Positions 17,230 to 54,746 of a DNA stretch of 64,000 nt are shown here, one piece after another. The translations under genes were made by a program, and so were the position numbers. The stretch covers positions 17,174,001 through 17,238,000 of the forward strand of contig NC_043022.1 in the NCBI RefSeq assembly GCF_006345805.1, in the 5' to 3' direction. Each line of letters begins with the position of its first letter. Within the stretch, counting starts at the first letter, position 1. The notes under the pieces are model-generated. The model was not told where the DNA came from. It did not search any database and was given only the letters and a program-made list of their open reading frames with translations. Source of the DNA: Octopus sinensis. Taxonomy: Eukaryota.

Positions 17230-17233
17230 ACTA

Positions 17234-31409: not shown

Positions 31410-32849
31410 ATGAATGTTTACGAGAAATTTCGGCCACAAATTATCCGGAATCTCACTCAAATCGATGATGTTCTGGATTATTTACAGTCTGGTGAACATA
31501 TCACAGAGAGCAATTATGAAAGTATAAGATCAGAAAAGAAAGAAAGCGACAAAATTCGAGAAATGTTGAACATTTTAACAAAAAGAAGTTGTCCTCCTCA
31601 AACGTTCGTGAAGATTCTTTCCGAAACAGGAAACGAATTTTTAGAGAAACTATTCCAAGAACACTTGAACATGAAAATTGAAAGAAAAGTTGTTGAAGAA
31701 AAACCAAAGCCACCAGCAAGAGACAAACGGAGAGTATTTATTATGAAAGGTATGGACGCAGACGACAAATTACATGAATGTTTTTCAAGAAAAAATCCAG
31801 ACTGGGAAGTATCAAATCATTTAGGTTCTATAAACAAATTAAAGGAGGTAATTGGTTCCGTACCAGAGAATAAGTTCAGTTATTTTGATATTATTGTTTC
31901 ATGCGATGAAGATCGTAACCATATTACTAATGAAAGTCTGAAAACAATTTTGGCTCGTATTGAAAAAGAACTCTTACCGGAGTTTCCACCAAGCATCATC
32001 ACTTTTTTGATTATTGTTGATGGGTATGATGATAAGGATTATGTTTTTCATTCCGACACAAAACCCGTGAGTTTTAGGGATGCTAAGATTCGCAAACCAG
32101 TCCTTAGAATATTGACAAGAAAGTTCTTGCATGGATTCCTAGAAGCTTTCTTAAAAGGTGAGGAAACGTTCAATATTTTCATTGCTAAAAAATTCGATTT
32201 GGAAAACAATCTTATGAAAAATAATCCATCGGAAGGAAAAACAGATAAAAGGAAAATATTTATTATGCAAGGTCTGGAACAAAACGAAATATTACGTGAA
32301 TGTTTTTCAGGAAGTAATCCAGACTGGGAAGTATCAACTCTTTGTGGCTCTATAACCAAATTAATAAAGGAAATTGCTTCCATACCAGAGAATAAGTTCA
32401 GTTATTTTGATATTATTGTTTTATGCGATGAAGAGGGTAACCATATTACTAATGAAAGTCTGAAAACAATTTTGCCTTGTATTGAAAACGAACTCTTACC
32501 GAAGTTTCCACCAAGCATCATCACTCTTTTGATTATTGTTAATAATAAAGAGACTGAATCTAAGCCTGTGCAAGAATCCCCATCTGTGAATACGGACGAT
32601 CTTCGAGATTCCAGGCCTGTGCAGGAATCCCAATCTGAGAATATGGACGATCTTCGAGATTCCAGGCCTGTGCAGGAATCCCAATCTGAGAATATGAATG
32701 ACTTACCAGAATCCCAATCAGTGACTGGAGTACTCAAAGCAGACTCTTGCGAAAAATTCTTTAATGCTTTCACCGAAAGTAAAGAAATGTTCAATGTTTT
32801 TATTCGAAAAGCTGATACAAGAAAACAGCTAGGATTACAAGTTTATTGA
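31410..32849 (+). CDS. CARD + 2 caspase-like alpha/beta modules (paralogue 1, 479 aa, single coding exon)
   Basis: Intact ORF. The N-terminal ~85 aa match the CARD pattern (R..II.NL..I.DVLDYL.S...IT...YE.I......DK.R.ML.IL.KR....F..IL.ETG). Module starts at 31725 and 32247, with a 3x17-aa linker repeat at 32559-32711. ATG used rather than the TTG in the ORF track. Confidence 0.9.
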   Translation: MNVYEKFRPQIIRNLTQIDDVLDYLQSGEHITESNYESIRSEKKESDKIREMLNILTKRSCPPQTFVKILSETGNEFLEKLFQEHLNMKIERKVVEEKPKPPARDKRRVFIMKGMDADDKLHECFSRKNPDWEVSNHLGSINKLKEVIGSVPENKFSYFDIIVSCDEDRNHITNESLKTILARIEKELLPEFPPSIITFLIIVDGYDDKDYVFHSDTKPVSFRDAKIRKPVLRILTRKFLHGFLEAFLKGEETFNIFIAKKFDLENNLMKNNPSEGKTDKRKIFIMQGLEQNEILRECFSGSNPDWEVSTLCGSITKLIKEIASIPENKFSYFDIIVLCDEEGNHITNESLKTILPCIENELLPKFPPSIITLLIIVNNKETESKPVQESPSVNTDDLRDSRPVQESQSENMDDLRDSRPVQESQSENMNDLPESQSVTGVLKADSCEKFFNAFTESKEMFNVFIRKADTRKQLGLQVY

Positions 32850-33729
32850 AGGAAAGGACTTTGTTCATCTTGCAGTTTTAACTGAACATTTTTTTTTTAT
32901 TATACTAAAAGCAAATTGACTGATGGTGCAATTAAAAACAGCACAAACTCCCATAAATGTTCAAGAATCACATCCAATAGTAAGGAATCCCCAAACATTT
33001 CAAAGGTAACTATAGAGGTTAACCACTTTAAATCTAATAAGTGCTGGCATTACTAAACAAGTTATACCAGTTATGTGTAACGAAGCACACCTCAACCTGG
33101 ATATTTTTCTTCTCATACCCTTCAGAAAAATGGATATATATTATTGAAATTTTTACTAAATACCTTTTAGGTGCTGAAGATCCTGAATATATAGGAATTT
33201 GAGGAAAAAAACAATTTCCAAGAGTATTTGGAGAGGAGTTTTGGAAAATTCATGCAAGTCAGTTTTATTTTTTCATAACTTGCAAAAATTTGGGTGTATT
33301 TTAGTAAAATTTTCTGCAGATAGCTTTCAGATTGTGACTAACTCAGAGTTTGTTGTGGAAATACTGGGGGAGGAAGGATATTTCACTAACTCAACTGTGT
33401 TTCCTCATACTTGTTAGCTTCTCAACCACATAGGTCTGGGTTCAATCCCACTGCATGTCACTTGAGCAAATGTCTCCTACTGTAGACTGAGGGTGACCAA
33501 AGATTTGTCAGCAGATTAGTAGATGGAAACTGAAAGAAGCCTGTTGCATGTATATATATATATATATACTTTATTTAAAGCAGCAGAAAATTCAAGAAAA
33601 CCTGTTACTCTGAGTTTCCCGTTGCCGTTCGTTGGACAGATTTTGCTGCTTTAAATAAAGCAAATTACTCTACCACTGGTATTTGAGTACTCTTTTTTCC
33701 ACCTTGTTTCACATTTATGTGTTTACTCC

Positions 33730-33762
<33 letters not shown>

Positions 33763-33819
33763 TGATAATATATATGACATGCTTCTTTCAGTTTCCATCA
33801 ATCTCTCTCTCTCTCTCTC

Positions 33820-36659: not shown

Positions 36660-37576
36660 TGGTGTTTGTTTTGTATTTATAATAAAATATATACAAATTA
36701 TAAAAATGATTAAAAAATATACATATATATACAGTACTGTTTCTACTTTGTGGATTTTCCCCTATCACAGGGGGTTCCGGTACACAGCACCTACGATAGT
36801 CGAGAGATTAGCATATCCTGAAAACCAAGAACTTTGTCTGTGTGTGTGTGTGTATGTATGTGTGTGTATTCTTGTGTGTGTAAAGACGTCTTAATGGTTA
36901 GGACGTTGCACTCCACATCACTAGATTAATGTTTTAATACCCTGGATGCTTATGAATTCAAGCAAAACACTTTCTTTCACCTGAACCCCAGTCCACTCGG
37001 CTGCAAAGGGGTAAACCTGTAATGGAATGGCATTCTATTTGCCGGGGGTGGGGGGGATATGTTGGCTTCGTCCACCTGGGCAGCAGGGGGGGTAACATTC
37101 AACAGCTACAACTGTGTGTAGAGGTGCATTGTAACCAGTGGTGTATAACAAAAAAATGTCTGATACCCTGATATATATGTGTGTGTGTGTGTATGAAGGA
37201 GAAAAGAAAATGGAGATAAGGAAGTTAAGAATTGTTTATTATCAACAGCAAACTGGTCATGTTAAAATAAATGGATAAGCCCACATAATATAACATCCAA
37301 AGTTATGTTTTTTCCCTATGATGAAATTACACTCCTGACACGTAAATGTAAATTTGTAATTAGATTATTGAGTATTGATTGAAACGGGTTGTAAGAATCG
37401 AAGATGACCAGTTTGCTTTTTGCTGAACTGCTACGTCACAGTGACCTAAATACACTGATACCAGTTGTCAGGTGGTGGCGGAGGGAAACACACACGCATC
37501 AGCCTGTGGTTATATACACTCGTCAGCCTGAGGCTACATACAGAAGTCACTTGCACAGGGTGTTATTAACATCATC
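36660..37576 (+). repeat. Distal upstream block of CARD gene 2, duplicated at 45158-46496
   Basis: Colinear near-identity with 45158-46496 apart from a SINE in the second copy. Confidence 0.9.
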
Positions 37577-37852
37577 GTATTGTCATGAACAATAATATTC
37601 TTTCCGACAATATTTTTTGTTCTGTACATCGGTTGAGCATGAAATCTGTCGAAACTAATGTATAGTATTAGTTGTAAATACCCGAAGTAAAGAAATATCA
37701 ATTACCAAGTGTTTAGTAACACACACACACATAAATACATAGAAAAGTGGAGAGAGAGAAAACTAAGAGAGGACGAACACAAAACCCGGAAATAAGACGC
37801 GACATTCATTTCTCGAGAATTCCTATTCAGGACATTACATTATTTGCCAAAA

Positions 37853-40800
37853 ATGAATGTTTACGTGAAACTTCGGCCACAAATTATCCGGAATCTCACT
37901 CAAATCGATGATGTTCTGGATTATTTACAGTCTGGTGAACATATCACAGAGAGCAATTATGAAAGTATAAGATCAGAAAAGAAAGACAGCGACAAAATTC
38001 GAGAAATGTTGAACATTTTAACAAAAAGAAGTTGTCCTCCTCAAACGTTCGTGAAGATTCTTTCCGAAACAGGAAACGAATCTTTAAAGAAACTATTCCA
38101 AGAACACTTACCGAAAATGGAAAGAGAAGTTGTTGAAGAAAAACCAATGCCACAAGCAAGAGACAAACGGAGAGTATTTATTCTGGAAGGTATGGACACA
38201 GACGAAAAATTACTTGAATGTTTTTCAAGAAAAAATCCAGACTGGGAAGTATCAAATCATTTAGGTTCTATAAACAAATTAAAGGAGGTAATTGGTTCCG
38301 TACCAGAGAATAAGTTCAGTTATTTTGATATTATTGTTTTATGCGATGAAGACTATAATTATATTACTAATGAAAGTCTGAAAACAATTTTGCCTCGTAT
38401 TGAAAAAGAACTCTTACCGGAGTTTCCACCAAGCATCATCACTTTTTTGATTATTGTTGATGGGAATGATGATAGTGGTTATGTTTTTCATTCCGACACA
38501 AAACCCGTGAGTTTTAGGGATGCTAAGATTCGCAAACCAGTCCTTAGAATATTGAAAATAAAGTTCTTGCATGGATTCCTAGAAGCTTTCTTAAAAAGTG
38601 AGGAAACGTTCAATATTTTCATTGATATAAAATTCCTATGGGAAAAAAGTCTTGGAGATAAGAAACCAGTAGAAGAAACAGGAGACAAAAGGAAAGTTTT
38701 TATTCTGGAAGGTTTGGAACAAGATGAAAAATTACACAAACATTTTGCAGAAAGAAATCCCGACTGGGATGTGTCTTTTATTTTAAACCAAAAGTCGTTA
38801 ATGCAACAAATTACTTCCATAGCTCTGAATGAATTTAGTTATTTTGATATTATTGTTTTATGCGATGAAGAGGGTAACCATATTACTAATGAAAGTCTGG
38901 AAACAATTTTGCCTCGTATTGAAAAAGAACTCTTACCAAAGTTTCCACCAAGCATCATCACTTTTTTGATTATTGTTGATGGGAATGATGATAACGGTTA
39001 TGTTTTTCATTCCGACACAAAACCTGTGAGTTTTGGTGATGCTCAGATTCCCAAACCCGTCTTCAGAATAGTGAAAAAGAATATTTTTGAAGACTACATA
39101 GAAGCTTTCTTCAGACACGATGAAATGTTCAATATCTTCATTGCTAAAAAATTCGATTTGGAAAGCAATTTTATGAAAAATAATCCATCGGAAGGAAAAA
39201 CAGATAAAAGGAAAATATTTATTGTGGAAGGTATGGAACAAGACGAAAAATTACACAAACATTTTGCAGAAAGAAATCCAGACTGGGATGTGTCTTTTAT
39301 TTTAGGCTCTCTAACCAAATTAAAGGAGAAAATTGCTTCCATAGCTCCAAATGAATTCAGTTATTTTGATATTATTGTTTTATGCGATGAAGAGGGTAAC
39401 CATATTACTAATGAAAGTCTGAACACAATTTTGGCTCGTCTTGAAAAAGAACTCTTACCAAAGTTTCCACCAAGCATCATCACTTTTTTGATTATTGTTG
39501 ATGGGAATGATGATAACGGTTATGTTTTTCATTCCGACACAAAACCTGTGAGTTTTGGTGATGTTCAGATTCCCAAACCCGTCTTCAGAATAGTGAAAGA
39601 GAATATTTTTGAAGACTACATAGAAGCTTTCTTCAGACATGATGAAATGTTCAATATCTTCATTGCTAAAAAATTCGATTTGGAAAACAATTTTCTGAAA
39701 AATAATCCATCGGAAGGAAAAACAGATAAAAGGAAAATATTTATTGTGGAAGGTCTAGAACAAGACGAAAAATTACACAAACATTTTGCAGAAAGAAATC
39801 CAGACTGGGATGTGTCTTTTATTTTAGGCTCTCTAACCAAATTAAAGGAGAAAATTGCTTCCATAGCTCCAAATGAATTCAGTTATTTTGATATTATTGT
39901 TTTATGCGATGAAGAGGGTAACCATATTACTAATGAAAGTCTGAAAACAATTTTGGCTCGTCTTGAAAAAGAACTCTTACCAAAGTTTCCACCAAGCATC
40001 ATCACTTTTTTGATTATTGTTGATGGGAATGATGATAACGGTTATGTTTTTCATTCCGACACAAAACCTGTGAGTTTTGGTGATGTTCAGATTCCCAAAC
40101 CCGTCTTCAGAATAGTGAAAAAGAATATTTTTGAAGACTACATAGAAGCTTTCTTCAGACATGATGAAATGTTCAATATCTTCATTGCTAAAAAATTCGA
40201 TTTGGAAAACAATTTTATGAAAAATAATCCATTGGAAGGAAAAACAGATAAAAGGAAAATATTTATTGTGGAAGGTCTGGAACAAGACGAAAAATTACAC
40301 AAACATTTTGCAGAAAGAAATCCAGACTGGGATGTGTCTTTTATTTTAGGCTCTCTAACCAAATTAAAGGAGAAAATTGCTTCCATAGCTCCAAATGAAT
40401 TCAGTTATTTTGATATTATTGTTTTATGCGATGAAGAGGGTAACCATATTACTAATGAAAGTCTGAACACAATTTTGGCTCGTCTTGAAAAAGAACTCTT
40501 ACCAAAGTTTCCACCAAGCATCATCACTTTTTTGATTATTGTTGATGGGAATGATGATAACGGTTATGTTTTTCATTCCGACACAAAACCTGTGAGTTTT
40601 GGTGATGTTCAGATTCCCAAACCCGTCTTCAGAATAGTGAAAGAGAATATTTTTGAAGACTACATAGAAGCTTTCTTCAGACATGATGAAATGTTCAATA
40701 TCTTCATTGCTAAAAAATTCGATTTGGAAAGCAATTTTCTGAAAAATAATCCATCGGAAGGAAAAACAGATAAAAGGAAAATATATATTGTGGAAGGTCT

Positions 40801-43800
40801 AGAACAAGACGAAAAATTACACAAACATTTTGCAGAAAGAAATCCAGACTGGGATGTGTCTTTTATTTTAGGCTCTCTAACCAAATTAAAGGAGAAAATT
40901 GCTTCCATAGCTCCAAATGAATTCAGTTATTTTGATATTATTGTTTTATGCGATGAAGAGGGTAACCATATTACTAATGAAAGTCTGAAAACAATTTTGG
41001 CTCGTATTGAAAAAGAACTCTTACCAAAGTTTCCACCAAGCATCATCACTTTTTTGATTATTGTTGATGGGAATGATGATAACGGTTATGTTTTTCATTC
41101 CAACACAAAACCTGTGAGTTTTGGTGATGCTCAGATTCCCAAACCCGTCTTCAGAATAGTGAAAAAGAATATTTTTGAAGACTACACAGAAGCTTTCTTC
41201 AGACACGATGAAATGTTCAATATCTTCATTGCTAAAAAATTCGATTTGGAAGCAATTTTATGAAAAATAATCCATCGGAAGGAAAAACAGATAAAAGGAA
41301 AATATTTATTGTGGAAGGTCTGGAACAAGACGAAAAATTACACAAACATTTTGCAGAAAGAAATCCAGACTGGGATGTGTCTTTTATTTTAGGCTCTCTA
41401 ACCAAATTAAAGGAGAAAATTGCTTCCATAGCTCCAAATGAATTCAGTTATTTTGATATTATTGTTTTATGCGATGAAGAGGGTAACCATATTACTAATG
41501 AAAGTCTGAAAACAATTTTGGCTCGTATTGAAAAAGAACTCTTACCAAAGTTTCCACCAAGCATCATCACTTTTTTGATTATTGTTGATGGGAATGATGA
41601 TAACGGTTATGTTTTTCATTCCGACACAAAACCTGTGAGTTTTGGTGATGCTCAGATTCCCAAACCCGTCTTCAGAATAGTGAAAAAGAATATTTTTGAA
41701 GACTACATAGAAGCTTTCTTCAGACATGATGAAATGTTCAATATCTTCATTGCTAAAAAATTCGATTTGGAAAACAATTTTATGAAAAATAATCCATCGG
41801 AAGGAAAAACAGATAAAAGGAAAATATTTATTGTGGAAGGTTTGGAACAAGACGAAAAATTACACAAACATTTTGCAGAAAGAAATCCAGACTGGGATGT
41901 GTCTTTTATTTTAGGCTCTCTAACCAAATTAAAGGAGAAAATTGCTTCCATAGCTCCAAATGAATTCAGTTATTTTGATATTATTGTTTTATGCGATGAA
42001 GAGGGTAACCATATTACTAATGAAAGTCTGAAAACAATTTTGGCTCGTCTTGAAAAAGAACTCTTACCAAAGTTTCCACCAAGCATCATCACTTTTTTGA
42101 TTATTGTTGATGGGAATGATGATAGTGGTTATGTTTTTCATTCCGACACAAAACCTGTGAGTTTTGGTGATGTTCAGATTCCCAAACCCGTCTTCAGAAT
42201 AGTGAAAAAGAATATTTTTGATGACTACATAGAAGCTTTCTTCAGACATGATGAAATGTTCAATATCTTCATTGCTAAAAAATTCGATTTGGAAAGCAAT
42301 TTTATGAAAAATAATCCATCGGAAGGAAAAACAGATAAAAGGAAAATATTTATTGTGGAAGGTCTGGAACAAGACGAAAAATTACACAAACATTTTGCAG
42401 AAAGAAATCCAGACTGGGATGTGTCTTTTATTTTAGGCTCTCTAACCAAATTAAAGGAGAAAATTGCTTCCATAGCTCCAAATGAATTCAGTTATTTTGA
42501 TATTATTGTTTTATGCGATGAAGAGGGTAACCATATTACTAATGAAAGTCTGAAAACAATTTTGGCTCGTATTGAAAAAGAACTCTTACCAAAGTTTCCA
42601 CCAAGCATCATCACTTTTTTGATTATTGTTGATGGGAATGATGATAACGGTTATGTTTTTCATTCCGACACAAAACCTGTGAGTTTTGGTGATGCTCAGA
42701 TTCCCAAACCCGTCTTCAGAATAGTGAAAAAGAATATTTTTGAAGACTACACAGAAGCTTTCTTCAGACACGATGAAATGTTCAATATCTTCATTGCTAA
42801 AAAATTCGATTTGGAAAGCAATTTTATGAAAAATAATCCATCGGAAGGAAAAACAGATAAAAGGAAAATATTTATTGTGGAAGGTCTGGAACAAGACGAA
42901 AAATTACACAAACATTTTGCAGAAAGAAATCCAGACTGGCATGTGTCTTTTATTTTAGGCTCTCTAACCAAATTAAAGGAGAAAATTGCTTCCATAGCTC
43001 TAAATGAATTCAGTTATTTTGATATTATTGTTTTATGCGATGATGAGGGTAACCATATTACTAATGAAAGTCTGAAAACAATTTTGGCTCGTCTTGAAAA
43101 AGAACTCTTACCAAAGTTTCCACCAAGCATCATCACTTTTTTGATTATTGTTGATGGGAATGATGATAACGGTTATGCTTTTCATTCCGACACAAAACCT
43201 GTGAGTTTTGGTGATGCTCAGATTCCCAAACCCGTCTTCAGAATAGTGAAAAAGAATATTTTTGAAGACTACATAGAAGCTTTCTTCAGACACGATGAAA
43301 TGTTCAATATCTTCATTGCTAAAAAATTCGATTTGGAAAACAATTTTCTGAAAAATAATCCATCGGAAGGAAAAACAGATAAAAGGAAAATATTTATTGT
43401 GGAAGGTCTGGAACAAGACGAAAAATTACACAAACATTTTGCAGAAAGAAATCCAGACTGGGATGTGTCTTTTATTTTAGGCTCTCTAACCAAATTAAAG
43501 GAGAAAATTGCTTCCATAGCTCCAAATGAATTCAGTTATTTTGATATTATTGTTTTATGCGATGAAGAGGGTAACCATATTACTAATGAAAGTCTGAAAA
43601 CAATTTTGGCTCGTATTGAAAAAGAACTCTTACCAAAGTTTCCACCAAGCATCATCACTTTTTTGATTATTATTGATGGGAATGATGATAACGGTTATGT
43701 TTTTCATTCTGACACAAAACCTGTGAGTTTTGGTGATGCTCAGATTCCCAAACCCGTCTTCAGAATAGTGAAAAAGAATATTTTTGAAGACTACACAGAA

Positions 43801-44376
43801 ACTTTCTTCAGACATGATGAAATGTTCAATATCTTCATTGCTAAAAAATTCGATTTGGAAAGTAATTTTCTGAAAAATAATCCATCGGAAGGAAAAACAG
43901 ATAAAAGGAAAATATTTATTGTGGAAGGTCTGGAACAAAACGAAATATTGCACGAACATTTTTCAAGAGATATTCCAGACTGGGATGTATCATTTATCTT
44001 AAACCAAAAGTCGTTAATGGAACAAATTGCTTCCATACCTATTAATGAATTTAGTTTTTTTGATATTATTGTTGTATGTGATGAAGACTCTAATGAGATT
44101 ACTAATGAAAGTCTGAGAACAATGCTATCCAATTATCCAACAAGCATCATCACATTTTTGATAACTGTTAATGAGATGGATGATAACAAAACTGAATCTC
44201 AGCCTGAGATTAACAATGATACTGAGGCTGTGATTGCATTATTGAAAAGGGAGTTTTTCCCTGAATTCTGGGATTCTTTCATTAAAAGTCTGGAAATGTT
44301 CAATGTTTTCATTCGAAAAGCTGATACAAGAAAACACCTCAGATTACAAGTTCATGGAAGAGAAAAGCTTTCGTGA
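37853..44376 (+). CDS. CARD + 12 caspase-like modules (paralogue 2); ~2174 aa if the 1-bp deletion at ~41250 is repaired, otherwise 1136 aa + 1038 aa split ORFs
   Basis: Module starts at 38165, 38687, 39206, 39728, 40250, 40772, 41293, 41815, 42337, 42859, 43381 and 43903. The period is 522 bp, except 519 bp (38687-39206) and 521 bp across the frameshift (ttggaagc versus ttggaaagc/ttggaaaac in other units). Confidence 0.85.
39206..43902 (+). repeat. Coding tandem array: nine near-identical 522-bp units
   Basis: Directly visible. Units differ at only a few recurrent sites. Confidence 0.97.
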
Positions 44377-45157: not shown

Positions 45158-45735
45158 GGTGTTTGTTTTGTATTTATAATAAAATATATACAAATTATAA
45201 AAATGATTAAAAAATATACATAGGAGTGGCTGTGTGGTAAGTAGCTTGCTAACCAACCACATGGTTCCGGGTTCAGTCCCACTGCATGGCATCTTGGGCA
45301 AGTGTCTTCTGCTATAGCCCCAGGCCGACCAATGGATTTGGTAGACGGAAACTGAAAGAAGCCTGTCGTATATATGTATATATATATATATATATGTATG
45401 TGTGTTTGTGTGTCTGTGTTTGTCTCCCTAGCATTGCTTGACATCCGATGCTGGTGCGTTTATGTCCCCGTTACTTAGCGGTTCGGCAAAAAGAGACCGA
45501 TAGAATAAGTACTGGGCTTACAAAAGAATAAGTCCCGGTGTCGAGTTGCTCGATTGAAGGCGGTGCTCCAGCATGGCCGCAGTCAAATGACTGAAACAAG
45601 TAAAAGAGAGTAAAAAAGAGTATATATACAGTACTGTTTCTACTTTGTGGATTTTCCCCTATCACAGGGGGTTCCGGAACACAGCACCTACGATAGTCGA
45701 GGGATTAGCATATCCTGAAAACCAGGAACTTCCTC

Positions 45736-45769
<34 letters not shown>

Positions 45770-46496
45770 TGTGTGTGTATGTGTGTGTATTTTTGTGTGT
45801 GTAAAGACGTCTTAATGGTTAGGACGTTGCACTCCACATCACTAGATTAATGTTTTAATACCCTGGATGCTTATGAATTCAAGCAAAACACTTTCTTTCA
45901 CCTGAACCCCAGTCCACTCGGCTGCAAAGGGGTAAACCTGTAATGGAATGGCATTCTATTTGCCGGGAGTGGGGGGGATATGTTGGCTTCGTCCACCTGG
46001 GCAGCAGGGGGGTAACATTCAACAGCTACAACTGTGTGTAGAGGTGCATTGTAACCAGTGGTGTATAACAACAAAATGTCTGATACCCTGATATATATGT
46101 GTGTGTGTGTGTGTGTATGTATAAAGGAGAAAAGAAAATGGAGATAAGGAAGTTAAGAATTGTTTATTATCAACAGCAAACTGGTCATGTCAAAATAAAT
46201 GGATAAGCCCACATAATATAACATCCAAAGTTATGTTTTTTTCCTCTGATGAAATTACACTCCTGACACGTAAATGTAAATTTGTAATTAGATTATTGAG
46301 TATTGATTGAAACGGGTTGTAAGAATCGAAGATGACCAGTTTGCTTTTTGCTGAACTGCTACATCACAGTGACCTAAATACACTGATACCAGTTGTCAGG
46401 TGGTGGCGGAGGGAAACACACACGCATCAGCCTGTGGTTATATACACTGGTCAGCCCGAGGCTACATACAGAAGTCACTTGCACAGGGTGTTATTA
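45158..46496 (+). repeat. Orphan duplicate of the gene-2 distal upstream block with a SINE inserted at 45221-45620
   Basis: Matches 36660-37576 at an offset of ~8.5 kb. It ends where a (CAT)n SINE tail meets the catcatcg site and is not followed by the proximal block or a CARD ORF. Confidence 0.85.
45221..45620 (+). mobile_element. tRNA-derived SINE inserted after the segmental duplication
   Basis: Absent from the orthologous aaaaaatatacatatatatacagtac site at ~36715-36735. Confidence 0.85.
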
Positions 46497-46860
46497 TCAT
46501 CATCATCATCATCATCGTTTAACGTCCGCTTTCCATGCTAGCATGGGTTGGATGATTTGACTGAGGACTGGCGAACCAGATGGATGCACCAGGCTCCAAT
46601 CTTGAACTGGCAGAATTTCTACAGCTGGAAGCCCTTCCTAACGCCAACCACTCTGAGAGTGTAGTGGGTGCTTTTACGTGTCACTGGCAATGACAGCGCT
46701 CGAATCTTTTACAGATGCCACCAGCACAGGTGCCAGTAAGGCGACACAGGTAACAATCACGCTCGGATGGTGTCTTTTACATGCCACTGGCTCAGAGGCC
46801 AGTTAGCCGCTTTGGCAACGATCATGCTCGGATGGTGCTCTTAACACCCTACTAGCACGG
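46495..46860 (-). mobile_element. (GAT)n-tailed SINE
   Basis: catcatcgtttaacgtccgctttccatgctagcatgggttgg... Confidence 0.8.
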
Positions 46861-46879
46861 GGCTTGAGAGCCTTGTGAG

Positions 46880-49242: not shown

Positions 49243-49674
49243 GGCGATCTTTCGTCTCTAGTAGACCTTTCCGTCGATTTCCGTAAAAAAAATTTTTTTT
49301 TACATATGGGCTTGCGGGAACTTTTGAAGTAATATACATACATATACACATACACCGAGTAAAAAATTTCAGTTATCTCTTCCTTTCACACATTACTCTG
49401 TCTCTTCACACACACTAACAGAAGCACTTCACTTACACAACATACTGTCTGTCTCCCACACCCCATCAAACACACACACACACGCACGCACACACACATG
49501 TCCATCAATGCTCCCATGCACGGTAACTTCAAAAGAACTTCCCTCGTCATACAATCGCTTTCTCTTAGTTTCTTTCGCTCTCATTACTTCAAAAGTTCCC
49601 GCAAGCCCATATGTAAAAAATAAAAAAATTTTACGGAAATCGACGGAAAGGTCTACTAGAGACGAAAGATTGCC
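49243..49674. mobile_element. MITE-like element with ~90-bp inverted arms
   Basis: ggcgatctttcgtctctagtagacctttccgtcgatttccgtaaaa...gggcttgcgggaacttttgaagtaat pairs with attacttcaaaagttcccgcaagccc...gtctactagagacgaaagattgcc. Confidence 0.8.
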
Positions 49675-50499
49675 TAATTTGACATTCCAAATTGACTCTG
49701 TAATTTTCTTTCCACCCGCATTCACATATTCGCATTTTGCGCAGGGACGTCCTTATTCGCGGTTTCTACAAAGTTCTCCTGATGCACAATCACTTCGTGA
49801 GTGTACATGCTGTTATTTAGTTGTTAATCCCCCTTCAATTTTTATTTACTTGTTTAAACATCCGAAACTGAAAGATTACCGGATAAAATTACGTAACTTT
49901 AAATTGTAATTTCTTTATTATTAACTGAGATTAGGCCTCGAAACCGGTTTTATATTATGATCAGTAAAACCGAAACCGATTTGCCAAAATCGATTTTAAG
50001 GCTTGCTATTTCGGATATTTTCAATAAAAGATGTTTTATGTAACACATTCTACCAGTATACGAAGTTTAAAAGTGTTTAGTTACAAATAACTATTTTTTA
50101 AATATGCCGGTCAAAGTGAAAAGATCCGCTGCTTCTTTTTTTTTTTTTTTTTTTCGCAAAACATTTCTCCATTTTTTCTTTTCAATAAATATCCTTGAAA
50201 CTGAACTAACTGAACTGTTGTCGGTCGCCTTTAGTTGAGAGTGCTGTCTGTTTCATTGAAACATATCGCAACATATCAATTCTCACCATCTTTCCCCTTG
50301 AACCTTAGATCAGCACCTTGTCATCTCCTTCGCTAACCCCTGGCTGACTCTTTGAATTTGCTGGTAACTGAGTTTATTAATAGCAAGTCAAGGGATGCTG
50401 TTAGTCTTCAGTCGGGTGATCATTCCCGTTGAGCATATGTAATAACCAGTTCCAGAGTCATTTCAAGGAAGTAACACTAAATTTTTTGATCGCTATAAC

Positions 50500-51300
50500 A
50501 GACGATAGTGATCGCCATAACAGACGATAGTGATGATGAAGCTGATATAAGCCAACAAGACATACTTTGTCAAACAGATTTGGCTCACGAAAATGCTTGT
50601 TTACCCCAGCTAAAACCTGAATTTAACAGAGTTTTAAATAAGGTAAGAAAAATTTCAAAACTTTACCGTAAATCTACAAAAAATGAAATTTTGCAAGATT
50701 TTGTACGAGCGAACTTTGATAACAGAGAATATAAACTTATACTGGATTGCAGAACTCGGTGGAATGGCACATTCCATATGATTGAGAGATATTTGAAATT
50801 GAAAAGCTGCATTCCAAAAGATCTACGTGCAGAACTTTCCAAGATGCCGTCGCTGACGAAGAATGGAAATCTCTCAATTTACTATATGAAATTCTGCATT
50901 CAGTAGAAATTATTTTGAAGGCTATTTGCGCTGACGATACGGGTTTACTGAAAGCAGAATATTCTATAGAATTTTTATTGAATAAACTTAATATCATCGG
51001 CAACCCTTTGGCTCTAAATCTTCGTGAAAGACTTATGCATAGATATAATAAGAGAAGAAATGTCGAAACCTTGATTTTCTTGAGGTATTTAGATAACCCA
51101 AGGAAATTTAAAGGTGAGTCAATTTCTGGACATTTTCTATTTTTTAACGAAACAACATTTAAGGGAGTATGCTGAACAAACATATAGGAGATTATTTCCT
51201 GAACATGATGCTGAGAACACAACAGAATTATACAAAGAAAATGAAATAAGGGAACCTAGAAACAAATGTTACTGTTGTCCCATCTTCTTATGAAGGTAAT
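50500..51300 (+). pseudogene. hAT (Ac/Hermes-like) transposase remnant
   Basis: KVRKISKLYRKS...LILDCRTRWNGTFHMIERYL motif, broken by frameshifts. Confidence 0.8.
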
Positions 51301-51376
51301 GGACTCATTCGTGAATACACAAGCACAATGAAGAGCCCGAGATGGTAACAGATGGATTTGAAATTTCTAAAGAATT

Positions 51377-51548
51377 CGGGTACTATTTAAGAAGAGTGAT
51401 CCCGGTGCGCGCACTCGCGCTAGCTAGTCGTGACTAGTCGATCCTACAACGACTACCTAGCAAAGTAAATAAAACACAAAGGATCGACTAGTCACGACTA
51501 GCTAGCGCGAGTGCGCGCACCGGGGCCACTCTTCTTAAGTAGTACCCG
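51377..51548. mobile_element. CpG-rich MITE, short member of the 30175 family in opposite orientation
   Basis: ~68-bp TIRs (gggtacta...gatcct) with 3 mismatches. The internal caaagtaaataaaac is the reverse complement of gttttatttactttg in the 30.2 kb copy. Confidence 0.85.
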
Positions 51549-51929
51549 CGAAAACCGGTTTTGAGAATTACTTATTCTTGAACTCGGTTTTGGGAATTAT
51601 CGGTCTCAAAGCAACGAAAATATTTTGACAAATTAAATTTAAATGTTGAGGCTTATAAACACCTTCCACGCTGCAATTGTTTTCGTTCCAGCACACGATC
51701 TCAGATCAGGTCACTTGATATGCAAGTACATCTCCGTAAATCTTTATTATTAATTTCTACAAAAAAAAAAAAAAAAAAATGATGCGATTTTCGCCATCAG
51801 CAAAACTACATTAGAACCATATTCTTTGAAAATGACCTGGTACAATTTGAAAAACTTGAAGTCATTGGAAGAAATTTTACGCGATTCTGAGGTAGGTACT
51901 CGGAAATCATAGGAGAGGGTAAGATAAAA

Positions 51930-52070
51930 TTGATCTCCAATTACCCGGGGCTGGGCATGGATGGGCGGGCGGGGGGTAATTGGAAATCAATTTCGATTCC
52001 CCACCCCTTCACCCCTGAGAAATGTTAAGCGAGGTCACCTGAATGGAAATCTCCCTCGCTATCCTCCGGG
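51930..52070. promoter_or_regulatory. GC-rich island upstream of gene 3: 17-bp inverted repeat around a G-quadruplex-type tract with GC boxes, and a kappaB-like site
   Basis: ttgatctccaattaccc pairs with gggtaattggaaatcaa around GGGG-ct-GGG-catggat-GGG-c-GGG-c-GGGGGG. GGAAATCTCCC at 52045-52055. Function is inferred. Confidence 0.35.
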
Positions 52071-52127
52071 GTAATGCCTTTCCCATTTTCTCTGTTGGTG
52101 CCAAGAGAAATGTTAAAATATGATAGA

Positions 52128-52658
52128 AAGCTGTATACAGCTATGGTACGACCACACTTGGAATTCGCATCATCAGTTTGGAACCCCTATCTTGCTCAGA
52201 ACATTGACCTCCTGGAATCTGTCCAGAGACGTGCAACCAAACGCATACCCTCCATCAGACACCTACCATATTCTGAGCGCCTTGTTTCCCTGGGCATGGA
52301 TTCACTGAAGCTCCGGCGTCTGGCGACGGACTTGGTAAACACCCACAAAGTTATCAACCACCTCACCAACAACAACACTGAACACCTTTTTGATCTCCAT
52401 GTGTCTAACACACGTGGACATGCCTACAAAGTCAGAAAACAATACAGCTCCCATGACTTTCGGAAACATTTTTTCACGCTCAGAGTTGCTGAAGCATGGA
52501 ATAAACTGCCTGCGTCAGTTGTTGACTGCCATGACACTGCATCCTTTAAGGCCCTCATGCTTTCCGAAATCCGCCGAAACTACACCTGGTTATATATACA
52601 CTTTAGATGAGTTGTAGTGCACCTGAGCACTGTACACAATTATTATTATTATTATTAT
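52128..52658 (+). mobile_element. CR1 LINE 3' end (young copy), ~260 bp upstream of the gene 3 ATG
   Basis: Near-identical to the 28.3 kb copy, with an (ATT)n tail. Confidence 0.9.
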
Positions 52659-52919
52659 AAAGTGGCCTTTATGCGAAGGTAAAGAATACGAACACCCGGT
52701 GTTAAGTGTTAGGGTTTTTGTTACGCCGAAAACGGTTGGCCTGCGTATTCTTTACCTCCACCATGCTTTACTTAAACTATTTGTTATTCTATATTCACAT
52801 TATATTGCCATTTTTGTTGTCGCTGCACCAGTCTTTGAGAAATTATCTGAATTGCAAATCCGGAAGTAATGGACTAATTTTTCGTGCTCTACTTCGTGCT
52901 TTTTACACCGTTTTTCAAA

Positions 52920-54746
52920 ATGGAGGTTTACGTGAGACTTCGGCCACAAATTATCCAGAATCTCACTCAAATCGATGATGTTCTGGATTATTTACAGTCT
53001 GATGGTCATATCACAACTAGAAATTACGAAACTATAAAATCACAAAATACAGAAAGCAACAGCATTCGGAAAATGTTGGAGATTTTACAAAAAAGAAATT
53101 GTTTACCTGAAACGTTCATCAAGATTCTTTCCGAAACAGGAAACGAATCTTTAAAGAAACAATTCCAAGAATACTTTACGAAAATGGGAAGAGAAGTTGA
53201 CCAAGAAAAACCAAAGCCACAAGCAAGAGACAAAAGGAAAATATTTATTCTGGAAGGTATGGACACAGACGAAAAATTACGTGAATGTTTTTCAAGAAGT
53301 AATCCAAACTGGGAAGTGTCTTTTATTTTTGGTTCTATAACCAAATTAAAGGAGGAAATTGCTTCCTTACCAGAGAATAAGTTCAGTTATTTTGATATAA
53401 TTGTTGTATGTGATGAAGACTATAAATATATTACTAATAAAAGTCTGAAAACAATTTTGCCTCGTATTGAAAAAGAACTCTTACCAAAGTTTCCACCGAG
53501 CATCAGCACTTTTTTGATTATTGTTGATGTGAATGATGATAATGGTTATGTTTTTCATTCCGACACAAAACCTGTGAGTTTTGGTGATGCTCAGATTCGC
53601 AAACCAGTCTTTAGAATATTGAAAACAAAGTTCTTGCATGGATTCCTAGAAGCTTTCTTTAAAAGTGAGGAAACGTTCAATATTTTCATTGATAAAAAAT
53701 TCCTATCGGAAAAAAGTCTTGTAGATAATAAACCAGTAGAAGAAACAACAGACAAAAGGAAAATATTTATTGTGGAAGGTCTGGAACAAGACGAAAAATT
53801 ACACAAACATTTTGCAGAAAGAAATCCAGACTGGGATGTGTCTTTTCTTTTAAACCAAAAGTCGTTAATGCAACAAATTACTTCCATAGCTCTGAATGAA
53901 TTTAGTTATTTTGATATTATTGTTCTATGTGATGAAGAGGGTAACCATATTACTAATGAAAGTCTGAAAACAATTTTGGCTCGTATTGAAAAAGAACTCT
54001 TACCAAAGTTTCCACCAAGCATCATCGCATTTTTGATAATTGTTGATGGGAATGATGATAACGGTTATGTTATTCATTCCGACACAAAACCTGTGAGTTT
54101 TGGTGATGCTCAGATCCCCAAACCCGTCTTCAGAATAGTGAAAAAGAATATTTTTGAAGACTACATAGAAACTTTCTTCAGACACGAGGAAATGTTCAAT
54201 ATCTTCATTGCTAAAAAATTCGATTTGGAAAACAATTTTATGAAAAATAATCCATCGGAAGGAAAAACAGATAAAAGGAAAATATTTATTGTGGAAGGTA
54301 TGGAACAAAACGAAAAATTGCACGAACATTTTTCAAGAGATATTCCAGACTGGGATGTGTCTTTTATTTTTAGCCATGAGTCGTTAATGGAACAAATTGC
54401 TTCCATACCTCTGAATGAATTTAGTTTTTTTGATATTATTGTTGTATGTGATGAAGACTCTAATGAGATTACTAATGAAAGTCTGAGAACAATGCTATCC
54501 AAATATCCAACAAGCATCATCACATTTTTGATAACTGTTAATGAGATGGATGATAACAAAACTGAATCTCAGCCTGAGATTAACAATGATACTGAGGGTG
54601 TGATTGCATTATTGAAAAGGGAGTTTTTCCCTGAATTCTGGGATTCTTTCATTAAAAGTAAGGAAATGTTCAATGTTTTCATTCGAAAAGCTGATACAAG
54701 AAAACACCTAAGAATACAAGTTCATGGAAGAGAAAAACTTTTGTGA
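52920..54746 (+). CDS. CARD + 3 caspase-like modules (paralogue 3, 608 aa, single coding exon)
   Basis: Intact ORF from MEVYVRLRPQ. Module starts at 53232, 53754 and 54273 (522 and 519 bp spacing, as in the first units of gene 2). The 3' flank is homologous to that of gene 2. Confidence 0.9.
   Translation: MEVYVRLRPQIIQNLTQIDDVLDYLQSDGHITTRNYETIKSQNTESNSIRKMLEILQKRNCLPETFIKILSETGNESLKKQFQEYFTKMGREVDQEKPKPQARDKRKIFILEGMDTDEKLRECFSRSNPNWEVSFIFGSITKLKEEIASLPENKFSYFDIIVVCDEDYKYITNKSLKTILPRIEKELLPKFPPSISTFLIIVDVNDDNGYVFHSDTKPVSFGDAQIRKPVFRILKTKFLHGFLEAFFKSEETFNIFIDKKFLSEKSLVDNKPVEETTDKRKIFIVEGLEQDEKLHKHFAERNPDWDVSFLLNQKSLMQQITSIALNEFSYFDIIVLCDEEGNHITNESLKTILARIEKELLPKFPPSIIAFLIIVDGNDDNGYVIHSDTKPVSFGDAQIPKPVFRIVKKNIFEDYIETFFRHEEMFNIFIAKKFDLENNFMKNNPSEGKTDKRKIFIVEGMEQNEKLHEHFSRDIPDWDVSFIFSHESLMEQIASIPLNEFSFFDIIVVCDEDSNEITNESLRTMLSKYPTSIITFLITVNEMDDNKTESQPEINNDTEGVIALLKREFFPEFWDSFIKSKEMFNVFIRKADTRKHLRIQVHGREKLL

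What the first reader, a model, noticed from the sequence alone, without database searches (positions are those of the whole stretch)
31410..54746. Tandem family of intronless CARD proteins carrying 2, 12 and 3 copies of a 174-aa module
All three paralogues share one architecture: CARD, first unit, variable internal units, and a shortened terminal unit ending DTRK(Q/H)L. Module number varies six-fold within 23 kb. CARDs nucleate death-fold signalling filaments, so a CARD fused to a variable-length array of folded domains would set the valency of the cargo. I do not recognise this architecture from described caspase, NLR, RLR or CARD-CC families. Tandem clustering, intronless CDS and rapid remodelling resemble innate-immune gene families. 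This is the best candidate for an undescribed cephalopod cell-death or immune system.
Basis: partly seen in the sequence, partly recalled or inferred. Interest (0 to 1): 0.92.

Follow-up and report, generated by a model that had tools for sequence, protein, structure and literature searches.

The report
Octopus CARD genes with repeated caspase-like modules
Three neighbouring single-exon octopus genes each encode a CARD death-fold domain followed by 2, 12 or 3 copies of a domain with no known sequence relatives. That domain is found only in octopods and folds most like a catalytically dead caspase, so this is probably an undescribed, fast-evolving family of cell-death or immune regulators.

Summary
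The window is Octopus sinensis chromosome CM016884.1. Three + strand single-ORF genes (31410-32849, 37853-44376, 52920-54746) encode a Pfam-significant CARD followed by 2, 12 and 3 copies of a ~174-aa unit.

Caveats:
- The 12-unit gene is split into 6+6 units by a 1-nt deletion in an A-run at ~41250 in this assembly. Its O. vulgaris counterpart is an intact 1821-aa ORF with an inferred 10 units.
- Gene 1's terminal unit is longer (201 aa), not shorter.

The module has no Pfam, PDB-sequence or profile-profile relative. Homologues were found only in Octopoda (O. vulgaris, O. bimaculoides, Argonauta hians).

An AlphaFold model (pLDDT 71.5) gives β1-α1-β2-α2-β3-α3-β4-loop-β5-α4-α5. Caspases give the best full-length structural matches in three Foldseek searches, but all are weak (E ≥ 4e-3, TM ≤ 0.56). 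The catalytic His/Cys and strand β6 are absent. In Argonauta a CARD-caspase gene lies 10 kb downstream.

Best reading: CARD-tethered arrays of non-catalytic caspase-like domains, acting as regulators or scaffolds of CARD assemblies, with copy number changed by unequal crossing-over. dN/dS is ~0.6-1.6. Function and transcription are untested. New variant of a known kind; moderate-to-high interest.

The parts
31410..32849 (+). Gene 1 CDS (479 aa): CARD plus unit 1 (174 aa) plus terminal unit (201 aa).
   Evidence: ORF. CARD at E 1.4e-9. Units. The RefSeq model for the same DNA is 462 aa.
31416..31655 (+). CARD of gene 1.
   Evidence: Pfam PF00619, 38.3 bits, residues 6-85 of ORF 31401-32849.
31722..32243 (+). 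Gene 1 module 1 (174 aa).
32244..32849 (+). Gene 1 terminal module (201 aa plus stop), ending DTRKQLGLQVY.
32564..32696 (+). 51-nt (17-aa) x2.6 acidic minisatellite inside the β4-β5 loop of gene 1's terminal module.
   Evidence: TRF, 95% matches. The O. vulgaris P0002 has about one copy fewer by eye. The RefSeq model is 17 aa shorter.
37853..44376 (+). Gene 2: CARD plus 12 modules. It is read as two ORFs (37844-41263 and 41260-44376) because of a 1-nt deletion.
37868..38095 (+). CARD of gene 2.
   Evidence: Pfam PF00619, 40 bits, E 3.9e-10.
38162..39202 (+). Gene 2 units 1 and 2. Both are distinct subtypes; unit 2 is the 173-aa 'NQKSLMQQ' type.
39203..43899 (+). Gene 2 units 3-11: nine near-identical 522-nt units, mostly 98-99% identical at DNA level. 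Unit 6 scores 94-96% in the ungapped comparison because of the 1-nt deletion near its 3' end.
41248..41263 (+). Frameshift site. GGAAGC replaces GGAAAGC/GGAAAAC (one A missing at ~41250-41251) and the resulting stop codon is at 41261-41263.
   Evidence: The O. vulgaris orthologue is an intact 1821-aa ORF.
43900..44376 (+). Gene 2 terminal module (158 aa plus stop), ending DTRKHLRLQVHGREKLS.
52920..54746 (+). Gene 3 CDS (608 aa): CARD plus 3 modules. Unit 1 is 53229-53750, unit 2 is 53751-54269, and the terminal unit is 54270-54746.
   Evidence: RefSeq isoform X1 (P0004, 435 aa) lacks exactly one unit.
52935..53165 (+). CARD of gene 3.
   Evidence: Pfam PF00619, 37.4 bits, E 2.7e-9.
31121..31409 (+). 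Proximal upstream region of gene 1, duplicated upstream of gene 2 (37577-37852). It includes a CCGGAAATAA motif about 55 nt before the ATG.
   Evidence: Self-BLAST, 91% identity. Alignment.
36724..37852 (+). Upstream region of gene 2. The segment 36724-37576 recurs at 45621-46504 and upstream of every O. vulgaris copy.
45621..46504 (+). Copy of the ~880-bp upstream element. It is separated from the gene 3 CDS by ~6.4 kb that contains transposon fragments.

Best explanation
This is a real, Octopoda-restricted tandem cluster of single-exon genes. Each protein has an N-terminal CARD followed by 1-12 copies of a ~158-aa α/β domain plus a ~16-aa disordered linker. The domain has no detectable sequence relatives.

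The domain most likely has the caspase (caspase-haemoglobinase) fold but is not a protease. At the positions that I align by eye with the caspase catalytic His and Cys, it carries an invariant Cys and a variable Asp/Glu/Asn. It also lacks the β6 dimer-interface strand.

Inferred mechanism:
- The CARD docks the protein by CARD-CARD contacts into a death-fold assembly (apoptosome-, PIDDosome- or inflammasome-like).
- The tethered pseudo-caspase modules then act as non-enzymatic regulators, scaffolds or decoys of CARD-caspase activation. This is analogous to cFLIP and to the CARD-only decoys clustered next to caspase-1.
- Array length changes by unequal crossing-over between near-identical 522-nt units. 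That would alter how many modules each recruited CARD brings.

What is shown: gene structure, CARD identity, repeat anatomy, taxonomic restriction and copy-number lability.
What is inferred: caspase-fold ancestry (about 0.55-0.6), non-catalytic status, and the regulatory role (about 0.3).
For: - **CARD.** Pfam scores are above the gathering threshold in all three genes. The profile hits many solved CARDs. Six helices are predicted.
- **Real coding genes.** Uninterrupted ORFs of 479, 608 and 1136+1038 codons sit in ~33-37% GC DNA. Each has an upstream in-frame stop, an AAAATG start context and a poly(A) signal. The same architecture is kept in O. vulgaris, including an intact 1821-aa ORF. It is also kept in O. 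bimaculoides and in Argonauta hians as a contiguous 420-aa ORF with 45-48% identical CARD and 22-26% identical modules.
- **Fold.** AF2 with a 10-sequence alignment gives pLDDT 71.5 and pTM 0.71. The topology is β1-α1-β2-α2-β3-α3-β4-(helix-less loop)-β5-α4-α5. From my knowledge of caspase structures, that is the caspase element order minus β6.
- **Foldseek against PDB.** The highest query-normalised TM scores are caspases: 7xn5_C caspase-3 0.55/0.56, 4jqz procaspase-3 0.54, 4ps0 caspase-8 0.53, 3e4c procaspase-1 0.52, with probabilities 0.96-0.98. Flavodoxins reach 0.39-0.45, CheY-like domains 0.35 and TIR 0.30-0.38.
- **Foldseek against viral structures.** The top hit is entomopoxvirus AMV063, and a protein named 'caspase-like protein' is at rank 6.
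- **Second, independent model.** A low-confidence model of a different unit again puts drICE (probability 1.00), caspase-3 (0.99), MALT1 and caspases-1, -4, -6, -7 and -8 among the top hits.
- **Synteny.** In Argonauta a 322-aa Peptidase_C14 gene lies 10 kb downstream on the same strand. Its first exon scores as a CARD.
- **Unequal crossing-over.** There are 12 units in O. sinensis against an inferred 10 in O. vulgaris, with the unit subtypes in a different order. O. vulgaris has 4 genes against 3 here. RefSeq isoforms differ from the genome by exactly one unit or one 17-aa repeat. Variants are shared among units in a mosaic pattern.
Against: - **No sequence-level link to caspases.** Pfam finds nothing even at E ≤ 10. 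The PDB profile search finds nothing relevant. hhalign against a validated caspase profile gives probability 2.2% and P 0.021, and the local match is in a structurally inconsistent register.
- **Weak structural matches.** Every Foldseek hit has E ≥ 4e-3 and TM ≤ 0.56. Generic flavodoxin-like and CheY-like folds appear at similar E-values.
- **Thin model basis.** The AF2 model rests on only 10 sequences from 4 species, and the β4-β5 region has pLDDT below 50.
- **Missing caspase features.** The catalytic dyad and β6 are absent.
- **No caspase nearby in Octopus.** None lies within the 64-kb window or the O. vulgaris loci.
- **Weak purifying selection.** dN/dS is 0.6-1.6 between species or paralogues, and 20 non-synonymous against 4 synonymous variants occur within the array.
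- **Gene 2 is frameshifted here.**
- **Nothing functional was tested.** There is no expression, interaction or functional evidence.
Confidence: 0.45

Rival explanations
1. The module is a generic flavodoxin-like, TIR-like or CheY-like α/β domain unrelated to caspases. CARD-driven oligomerisation brings many copies together as an effector (for example a nucleotide- or NAD-processing or ligand-binding domain) or as a binding platform.
For: Flavodoxins, WrbA, CpaE/CheY-like receivers and TIR-STING/SPARTA TIR domains appear among the Foldseek hits at E-values similar to the caspases. There is no sequence homology to caspases. Acidic residues cluster at the C-terminal ends of β1, β3 and β4 in Octopus units, which from general knowledge is where flavodoxin-like folds place their active sites.
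Against: These hits cover less of the model: TMq 0.30-0.45, or only ~100 aligned columns, against 0.52-0.55 over 174-216 columns for caspases. The model lacks the helix between β4 and β5 that (βα)5 folds have. hhalign P values are 0.38-0.53 for TIR, CheY and flavodoxin. No polar residue other than R3, D56, C61 and T94 is invariant across the ten aligned units, and the acidic positions vary in the Argonauta and terminal units. That argues against a conserved active site.
Confidence: 0.25
2. The cluster is a young, largely neutrally evolving or decaying set of lineage-specific duplicates, possibly retrogene-derived and lying among transposons. It has little or no current function, and the long array is a coding-sequence satellite that simply has not yet accumulated stop codons.
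For: dN/dS is ~0.6-1.6. Within the array there are 20 non-synonymous and 4 synonymous variants, close to the neutral expectation. Gene 2 carries a frameshift. The neighbourhood is rich in transposons and microsatellites. RefSeq models are inconsistent. No literature or expression evidence was found.
Against: The CARD-plus-module architecture and open frames are kept in four species, including Argonauta at only 22-26% module identity. That level of divergence needs long-term selection for coding capacity. By my estimate a 420-codon open frame in AT-rich DNA has a chance probability of about 1e-12. O. vulgaris keeps an intact 1821-codon ORF. The hydrophobic core and R3, D56, C61 and T94 are invariant. 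High dN/dS is also typical of immune genes under positive selection.
Confidence: 0.15
3. Polyprotein model, like filaggrin or polyubiquitin. The array is a precursor cut at the linkers or loops into single modules, so copy number sets the dose of a monomeric product rather than the valency.
For: The units are head-to-tail and near-identical, separated by a disordered ~16-aa linker (pLDDT below 50). Every unit, including those of Argonauta, starts with a basic [KR]-R-[KR] motif (R3 invariant, K4 nearly invariant). Conserved Asp residues (D104, D112) followed by small residues lie in the flexible β4-β5 loop.
Against: There is no signal peptide, so the protein would not reach secretory-pathway convertases. 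No cleavage evidence exists. One- and two-module paralogues exist. The first and last units are specialised subtypes rather than equal copies.
Confidence: 0.05
4. The exact count of 12 units and the frameshift are assembly artefacts of a 6.3-kb array of 98-99% identical repeats. The true gene is one intact ORF with a different unit number.
For: The deletion lies in a short A-run, which from general knowledge is a typical long-read or polishing error. An independent O. vulgaris assembly has an intact ORF with an inferred 10 units. RefSeq isoforms differ from this assembly by whole units.
Against: Nothing in the sequence itself shows an error. Unit variants form a consistent mosaic rather than a collapsed consensus. 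The frameshift could be a real allele.
Confidence: 0.4

Closest known systems
CARD-containing initiator caspases (caspase-2/-9, CED-3, Dronc; Pfam CARD + Peptidase_C14)
   Same: An N-terminal CARD is followed directly by an α/β domain whose predicted element order and best structural matches are caspase-like. A bona fide CARD-caspase is the neighbour of the Argonauta family member.
   Different: There is no Peptidase_C14 sequence signal. The catalytic His/Cys are absent, as is β6. The module is ~160 aa rather than ~250, and it is repeated 1-12 times in tandem.
cFLIP and other pseudo-caspases (death-fold domain plus catalytically dead caspase-like domain)
   Same: A death-fold recruitment domain is tethered to a probable non-catalytic caspase-like domain, and a regulatory or decoy role is plausible by analogy.
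   Different: cFLIP uses DEDs, has one pseudo-caspase domain, keeps clear sequence homology to caspase-8 and retains the dimer interface. Here homology is undetectable, β6 is missing and the domain is arrayed.
CARD-only decoy proteins (ICEBERG/CARD18, COP/CARD16, INCA/CARD17)
   Same: They are lineage-specific, tandemly clustered, rapidly evolving small CARD genes thought to modulate CARD-caspase recruitment. The ICEBERG CARD is among the weak hits of the family's CARD profile.
   Different: Those proteins are CARD only. The octopus proteins carry 1-12 additional folded modules.
Lineage-specific death-fold gene expansions with novel architectures in invertebrates (amphioxus, sea urchin, cnidarians, bivalves)
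   Same: A taxon-restricted, tandemly duplicated, fast-evolving CARD family with a non-canonical partner domain (recalled from general knowledge, not tested here).
   Different: No described member that I could find pairs a CARD with this module or with a long array of near-identical domains.
Single-exon coding macro-repeats with copy-number variation (filaggrin 324-aa units, polyubiquitin, LPA kringle IV-2)
   Same: Large, near-identical in-frame units whose number differs between close species or alleles through unequal crossing-over.
   Different: The domains are unrelated, and there is no evidence here for proteolytic processing into monomers.

Membership tests
CARD (death-fold superfamily, Pfam PF00619) | Scores above the curated Pfam gathering threshold. 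| tested here: met
   38.3, 40.0 and 37.4 bits against a cut-off of 23.9, E 4e-10 to 3e-9. A profile of five family CARDs hits MDA5, NLRP1, Apaf-1, ASC, RIPK2, cIAP1 and NOD1 CARDs in the PDB.
CARD (death-fold superfamily, Pfam PF00619) | Six-helix bundle. | tested here: met
   The single-sequence AF2 model predicts six helices in residues 9-88. pLDDT there is only ~45-60, so this is supportive rather than strong.
CARD (death-fold superfamily, Pfam PF00619) | Homotypic CARD-CARD binding or filament nucleation. | not testable with these tools
   Needs biochemistry.
Caspases (Peptidase C14) | Sequence match to the Peptidase_C14 or caspase profile. | tested here: not met
   No Pfam hit even at E ≤ 10. 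hhalign against a caspase profile gives probability 2.2%. That profile recovers caspase-3, -6 and -7 at 1e-111.
Caspases (Peptidase C14) | Catalytic His (SHG) after β3 and Cys (QACxG) after β4. | tested here: not met
   By my alignment of strand ends, the module has an invariant Cys61 after β3 and Asp/Glu/Asn100 after β4. No His is conserved across the ten aligned units.
Caspases (Peptidase C14) | Caspase-haemoglobinase fold (β1-α1-β2-α2-β3-α3-β4-linker-β5-α4-α5-β6). | tested here: inconclusive
   The element order matches up to α5. Caspases are the best full-length Foldseek matches in three searches, but with E ≥ 4e-3 and TM ≤ 0.56, and flavodoxin-like folds score similarly by E-value.
Caspases (Peptidase C14) | β6 strand forming the dimer interface. 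| tested here: not met
   The model ends with α5 (residues 150-166) followed by a disordered linker.
Pseudo-caspases (cFLIP-like) | Death-fold domain plus a caspase-fold domain lacking catalytic residues. | tested here: inconclusive
   The death-fold criterion is met and the catalytic residues are absent. The caspase fold is only weakly supported.
Pseudo-caspases (cFLIP-like) | Recognisable sequence homology to an active caspase paralogue. | tested here: not met
   Only synteny with a CARD-caspase in Argonauta was found.
TIR domain proteins | TIR profile match and a (βα)5 fold with a helix between the fourth and fifth strands. | tested here: not met
   No Pfam TIR hit. hhalign P 0.5. TIR structures reach only TMq 0.30-0.38. 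There is no helix between β4 and β5.
NLR, RLR, CARD-CC or Apaf-1 type CARD proteins | NACHT/NB-ARC, DExD/H helicase or coiled-coil region after the CARD. | tested here: not met
   Pfam finds only the CARD in the full-length proteins.
CARD-only decoy proteins | The CARD is the sole folded domain. | tested here: not met
   Every member found carries at least one module.

The most novel reading that the evidence does not exclude
Octopods have evolved a CARD-based counterpart of cFLIP that is built as an array. The ancestor would be a CARD-caspase that lost catalysis and the β6 dimer strand and then amplified its dead protease domain up to 12-fold within one exon.

Once recruited by its CARD into an apoptosome- or inflammasome-like filament, each molecule would present many pseudo-caspase modules. 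Their flexible β4-β5 loops keep conserved Asp residues at the place where caspases are themselves cleaved. The modules could therefore act as polyvalent decoy substrates or spacers that set the activation threshold of the initiator caspase. The rapidly changing copy number would then be a heritable tuning knob under host-pathogen selection.
Probability: 0.2. Interest if true: 0.8.

Novelty: new variant of a known kind. Interest (0 to 1): 0.6.

Why it matters
Cephalopod innate immunity and cell-death signalling are poorly charted. CARD proteins are the hubs of apoptosome, inflammasome and antiviral assemblies.

A taxon-restricted CARD family is a concrete, testable entry point into lineage-specific death-fold signalling. 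Its partner domain has no sequence relatives, is probably a dead caspase, and varies from 1 to 12 copies between paralogues and sister species.

If the pseudo-caspase reading holds, this would be the first arrayed pseudo-protease regulator. It would also be a natural experiment on how valency or dose controls filament-based signalling.

If the reading fails, the module is a new α/β domain family attached to a CARD, which is also worth a structure.

The locus is also a practical warning for annotation. RefSeq models here delete whole repeat units, and the reference carries a frameshift.

Tried and rejected
1. Pfam on a single module and on all ten aligned units, down to E ≤ 10, gave nothing relevant.
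2. An hmmsearch of the module profile against PDB sequences gave only a spurious 0.099 hit to a TATA-binding-protein-associated phosphoprotein (4wzs_B).
3. Word-indexed homologue searches with a single module and with the profile returned only two octopus proteins.
4. Exhaustive phmmer over 1.84 billion representatives found only 4 proteins, all from Octopoda. No squid, cuttlefish, nautilus or other mollusc relative appeared at this sensitivity.
5. Profile-profile comparison with caspases gave probability 2.2%. TIR, CheY and flavodoxin controls gave P 0.38-0.53. No sequence-level assignment is possible.
7. Exact-product look-ups of gene 1, gene 3 and the O. bimaculoides protein found nothing on record, so no transcript-derived contigs could be recovered.
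8. Literature searches for octopus or cephalopod CARD expansions, pseudo-caspases in molluscs, the LOC identifiers and AMV063 found nothing describing this family.
9. The hhalign local match placing module β1 (DKRKIFIVEG) on caspase β4 (GKPKLFIIQACRG) was rejected as a homologous register. The secondary-structure elements that follow do not correspond.
10. The idea that the RefSeq 435-aa isoform reflects a true intron was rejected. The junction is CT..AC, not GT..AG, and removes exactly one repeat unit.

Full report
**Where the window comes from.** The window is 100% identical over 36,148 nt to Octopus sinensis assembly GCA_006345805.1, chromosome CM016884.1. Window position equals L002 position plus 27,852. 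The orthologous O. vulgaris region (OX597839.1) is 98.4% identical over 7.4 kb.

**Checking the observation.** Three + strand ORFs occupy the stated interval.
- Gene 1 runs from ATG 31410 to stop 32849 (479 aa).
- Gene 2 runs from ATG 37853 to stop 44376.
- Gene 3 runs from ATG 52920 to stop 54746 (608 aa).

Module starts (DKR[KR][IV][FY]I) occur 2, 6+6 and 3 times, spaced 522 nt (174 aa) apart. Units 3-11 of gene 2 are mostly 98-99% identical at the DNA level. Unit 6 scores 94-96% in the ungapped comparison because of the deletion near its 3' end. First, second and terminal units are distinct subtypes shared between paralogues. Each ATG has an in-frame stop 45-60 nt upstream, an AAAATG context and an AATAAA or ATTAAA signal 68-116 nt after the stop codon. 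A single-exon CDS is therefore plausible.

Two corrections are needed.
- Gene 2 is not one ORF in this sequence. One A is missing from the GGAAA(G/A)C found at every other unit junction, at ~41250-41251. The frame therefore terminates at 41261-41263, and the remaining six units lie in a second ORF.
- Gene 1's terminal unit is 201 aa, not shortened, because its β4-β5 loop holds a 51-nt x2.6 minisatellite at 32564-32696.

**The CARD.** Pfam PF00619 matches all three N-termini at 37-40 bits against a gathering score of 23.9. A profile of five family CARDs hits solved CARDs of MDA5, NLRP1, Apaf-1, ASC, RIPK2, cIAP1, NOD1, RAIDD, ICEBERG, CARD8, BCL10 and CED-3. None stands out, so the CARD belongs to no recognisable subfamily. 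A single-sequence AF2 model predicts six helices, at low confidence.

**The module at sequence level.**
- Pfam finds nothing even at E ≤ 10 for ten diverse units.
- A profile search of PDB sequences finds nothing relevant.
- An exhaustive phmmer scan of 1.84 billion representative proteins finds four proteins. With the word-indexed search the known relatives are:
  - O. vulgaris CAI9741432.1 (602 aa, 3 units);
  - O. sinensis XP_036369560.1 (435 aa);
  - O. bimaculoides XP_014775104.1 (271 aa, 1 unit);
  - an O. vulgaris 286-aa protein (P0002, 1 unit);
  - Argonauta hians GAB1602176.1.
- In Argonauta the genomic ORF is a contiguous 420 codons: CARD plus two modules, 22-26% identical to the octopus unit. 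The annotated 490-aa model adds a dubious downstream exon.
- The family is therefore at least as old as the Octopus-Argonauta split. At this sensitivity it is confined to Octopoda.
- Across the ten aligned units the hydrophobic core plus R3, D56, C61 and T94 are invariant.

**The module at structure level.** AF2 on the 10-sequence alignment gives pLDDT 71.5 and pTM 0.71. The topology is β1-α1-β2-α2-β3-α3-β4, a low-confidence loop or hairpin, then β5-α4-α5 and a disordered ~16-residue linker. From my knowledge of caspase structures, this is the caspase order (β1-β4 in p20, a helix-less intersubunit crossover, then β5-α4-α5 in p10) without the final β6. Canonical (βα)5 folds such as flavodoxin, CheY and TIR have a helix between β4 and β5.

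Foldseek results:
- Against the PDB, nothing scores below E 1e-3.
  - Caspases give the highest query-normalised TM scores and full-length alignments: caspase-3 0.55/0.56, procaspase-3 0.54, caspase-8 0.53 and procaspase-1 0.52, with probabilities 0.96-0.98.
  - Other folds score lower: flavodoxins 0.39-0.45, CheY-like CpaE 0.35 over ~100 columns, and TIR 0.30-0.38.
- Against viral predicted structures, the top hit is entomopoxvirus AMV063 (E 4.8e-3), and an entomopoxvirus 'caspase-like protein' is at rank 6.
- A second, independent and poorer model (gene 3 CARD plus unit 1, no alignment) again returns drICE (probability 1.00), caspase-3 (0.99), MALT1 and caspases-1, -4, -6, -7 and -8 as roughly 20 of the top 50 hits.

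I aligned strand ends by eye.
- FDIIVLC61DEEG lines up with caspase-3 VCVLLSHGEEG. The invariant Cys61 therefore falls on the catalytic His.
- ITFLIIVD100G lines up with KLFIIQACRG. The variable Asp/Glu/Asn100 therefore falls on the catalytic Cys.

The module cannot be a caspase-type protease.

Against homology, profile-profile comparison with a caspase profile gives probability 2.2% (P 0.021), and only for a short match in a register that the secondary structure contradicts. TIR, CheY and flavodoxin controls give P 0.38-0.53. I rate a caspase-derived fold at about 0.55-0.6. That rating rests on concordant but individually weak structural evidence plus context.

**Genomic context.**
- In Argonauta a 322-aa gene with a Peptidase_C14 hit starts 10 kb downstream on the same strand. 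The 69 residues of it that I can see score as a truncated CARD (Pfam E 1.3e-3) and align in register with the family CARD (hhalign P 1.1e-3). The family member there neighbours a CARD-caspase.
- No caspase exon lies in the 64-kb window or in about 42 kb of O. vulgaris sequence.
- The octopus cluster sits among microsatellites and transposon fragments: RT tails, a CCHC gag-like ORF, and hAT/ZBED-like and HTH transposase ORFs.

**Evolutionary dynamics.**
- O. vulgaris has four genes: 461 aa, 286 aa, an intact contiguous 1821-aa ORF and 602 aa. O. sinensis has three.
- From its length I infer 10 units in the O. vulgaris long gene, against 12 here. The 'NQKSLMQQ' subtype is penultimate there rather than second.
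- Internal units are 97-99% identical between species and 98-100% within a species, so the array predates the split and has since been reshuffled.
- Variants are shared among units in a mosaic pattern.
- RefSeq models differ from the genome by exactly one unit. The 435-aa isoform has a CT..AC junction, so it is not a real intron. Another model differs by one 17-aa repeat (462 aa against 479 aa). I infer, but cannot show, that these reflect transcript reads from alleles with other copy numbers. All of this points to unequal crossing-over and gene conversion.
- dN/dS (Nei-Gojobori) is 0.62-0.79 for the clearest orthologues. It is 0.84-0.86 between paralogues, and 1.6 and 4.7 for gene 1 against its two O. 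vulgaris relatives. Within the array there are 20 non-synonymous and 4 synonymous variants.
- That pattern fits either relaxed constraint or diversifying selection. Long-term retention of the ORF and architecture out to Argonauta argues against simple decay.

**Mechanism.** What is shown: a bona fide CARD fused to a variable array of a folded, non-catalytic α/β domain, restricted to one lineage and evolving fast. What I infer:
- the CARD recruits the protein into CARD-CARD assemblies;
- the modules, probably dead caspase domains lacking the dimer strand, act as regulators, scaffolds or decoys of CARD-caspase activation, in the manner of cFLIP or the CARD-only proteins;
- array length sets how many modules arrive per CARD.

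Conserved Asp residues followed by small residues (D104, D112; in Octopus also D100 and D120) lie in the flexible β4-β5 loop, where caspases have their own processing sites. This suggests, speculatively, decoy-substrate behaviour. Rivals are a non-caspase α/β effector or binding domain, a largely neutral young family, a filaggrin-like polyprotein, and assembly error for the exact count and the frameshift.

**Comparison and novelty.** The proteins are members of the CARD superfamily (tested and met). They are not members of the caspases: profile, dyad and β6 criteria are not met, and the fold criterion is inconclusive. They are also not NLR, RLR, CARD-CC, TIR or CARD-only families.
- The closest functional analogue is cFLIP or a pseudo-caspase.
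- The closest structural layout is the CARD-caspase.
- The closest evolutionary behaviour is that of the clustered CARD-only decoys and of single-exon macro-repeat genes such as filaggrin.

The genes are present in databases only as 'uncharacterized protein', with inaccurate models. I found no paper on them. I rate this a new variant of a known kind, with interest 0.6.

Noticed in passing
window 41248-41263: A single-base deletion in an A-run breaks the 12-unit gene into two ORFs. The O. vulgaris orthologue is intact (1821 aa). This is either an assembly or polishing error or a real null or truncating allele.
   Followed up: partly
window 32564-32696: A 51-nt (17-aa, acidic) minisatellite lies inside the terminal module of gene 1. 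By eye the O. vulgaris 286-aa protein has about one repeat copy fewer, and the RefSeq model of gene 1 is exactly 17 aa shorter than the ORF.
   Followed up: partly
window 37853-54746 (RefSeq LOC118768009) and 31410-32849: The database gene models disagree with the ORFs. One 'gene' spans both gene 2 and gene 3, and its 435-aa product removes exactly one 522-nt unit with a non-canonical CT..AC junction. This is likely repeat-induced mis-modelling or a copy-number difference between the genome and the RNA donors.
   Followed up: partly
window ~31350-31362, ~37793-37805, ~52860-52872: A CCGGAA(A/G)TAA motif, which resembles an ETS-site core, lies about 55 nt upstream of the ATG of all three genes. 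It is conserved even though gene 3's upstream region is otherwise diverged. It may be a core-promoter element.
   Followed up: no
window 36724-37576 and 45621-46504; L001 533-1410, 8839-9715, 16058-16926: An ~880-bp element lies directly upstream of gene 2 and of three of the four O. vulgaris copies (the fourth was not examined). For gene 3 it sits 6.4 kb from the CDS, with transposon fragments in between. It is missing upstream of gene 1, where transposon sequences lie instead.
   Followed up: partly
window 12600-13175 (+), 28314-28889 (-), 52127-52658 (+), 59436-59762 (-): Three copies, 97-99% identical, of the 3' end of a retroelement ORF (…MVRPHLEFASSVWNPY…), plus a more diverged fourth copy. 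There is no Pfam hit. This looks like a recently active non-LTR element family.
   Followed up: partly
window 24784-25497 (+): A 237-aa ORF with a Cys/His-rich C-terminal half (…HCARCHKQYNPMDREHC…FFCRLCGKTF…) and no Pfam match. It may be an unannotated zinc-binding gene or a transposon remnant.
   Followed up: partly
window 29371-29775 (+); 57979-59010, 60914-61831 (+): Transposon-derived ORFs: a CCHC zinc-knuckle gag-like ORF upstream of gene 1, and hAT/ZBED-like and HTH (Tc/mariner-like) ORFs downstream of gene 3. The O. vulgaris locus has FAM200/ZBED5-like ORFs in the equivalent place.
   Followed up: partly
window 760-4800, 10200-12300, 17000-17950, 21860-23620: Kilobase-scale microsatellite and low-complexity blocks with strong strand skews (GC skew up to +0.63). 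They generate long spurious ORFs (poly-His/Thr/Pro, 'YIYI', 'LSIYLS').
   Followed up: no
L004 22113-22319 (Argonauta hians BAAFZT010000022.1): A CARD-caspase gene (322 aa, Peptidase_C14) starts 10 kb downstream of the Argonauta family member on the same strand, with a C2H2 zinc-finger ORF (15495-17219, - strand) in between. Only the first 69 residues were visible.
   Followed up: partly
L001 and L003 (O. vulgaris OX597839.1, 30.93-30.98 Mb): The sister species has four genes rather than three. It has an extra one-module gene of 286 aa, an inferred 10 rather than 12 units in the long gene, and the unit subtypes in a different order.
   Followed up: yes
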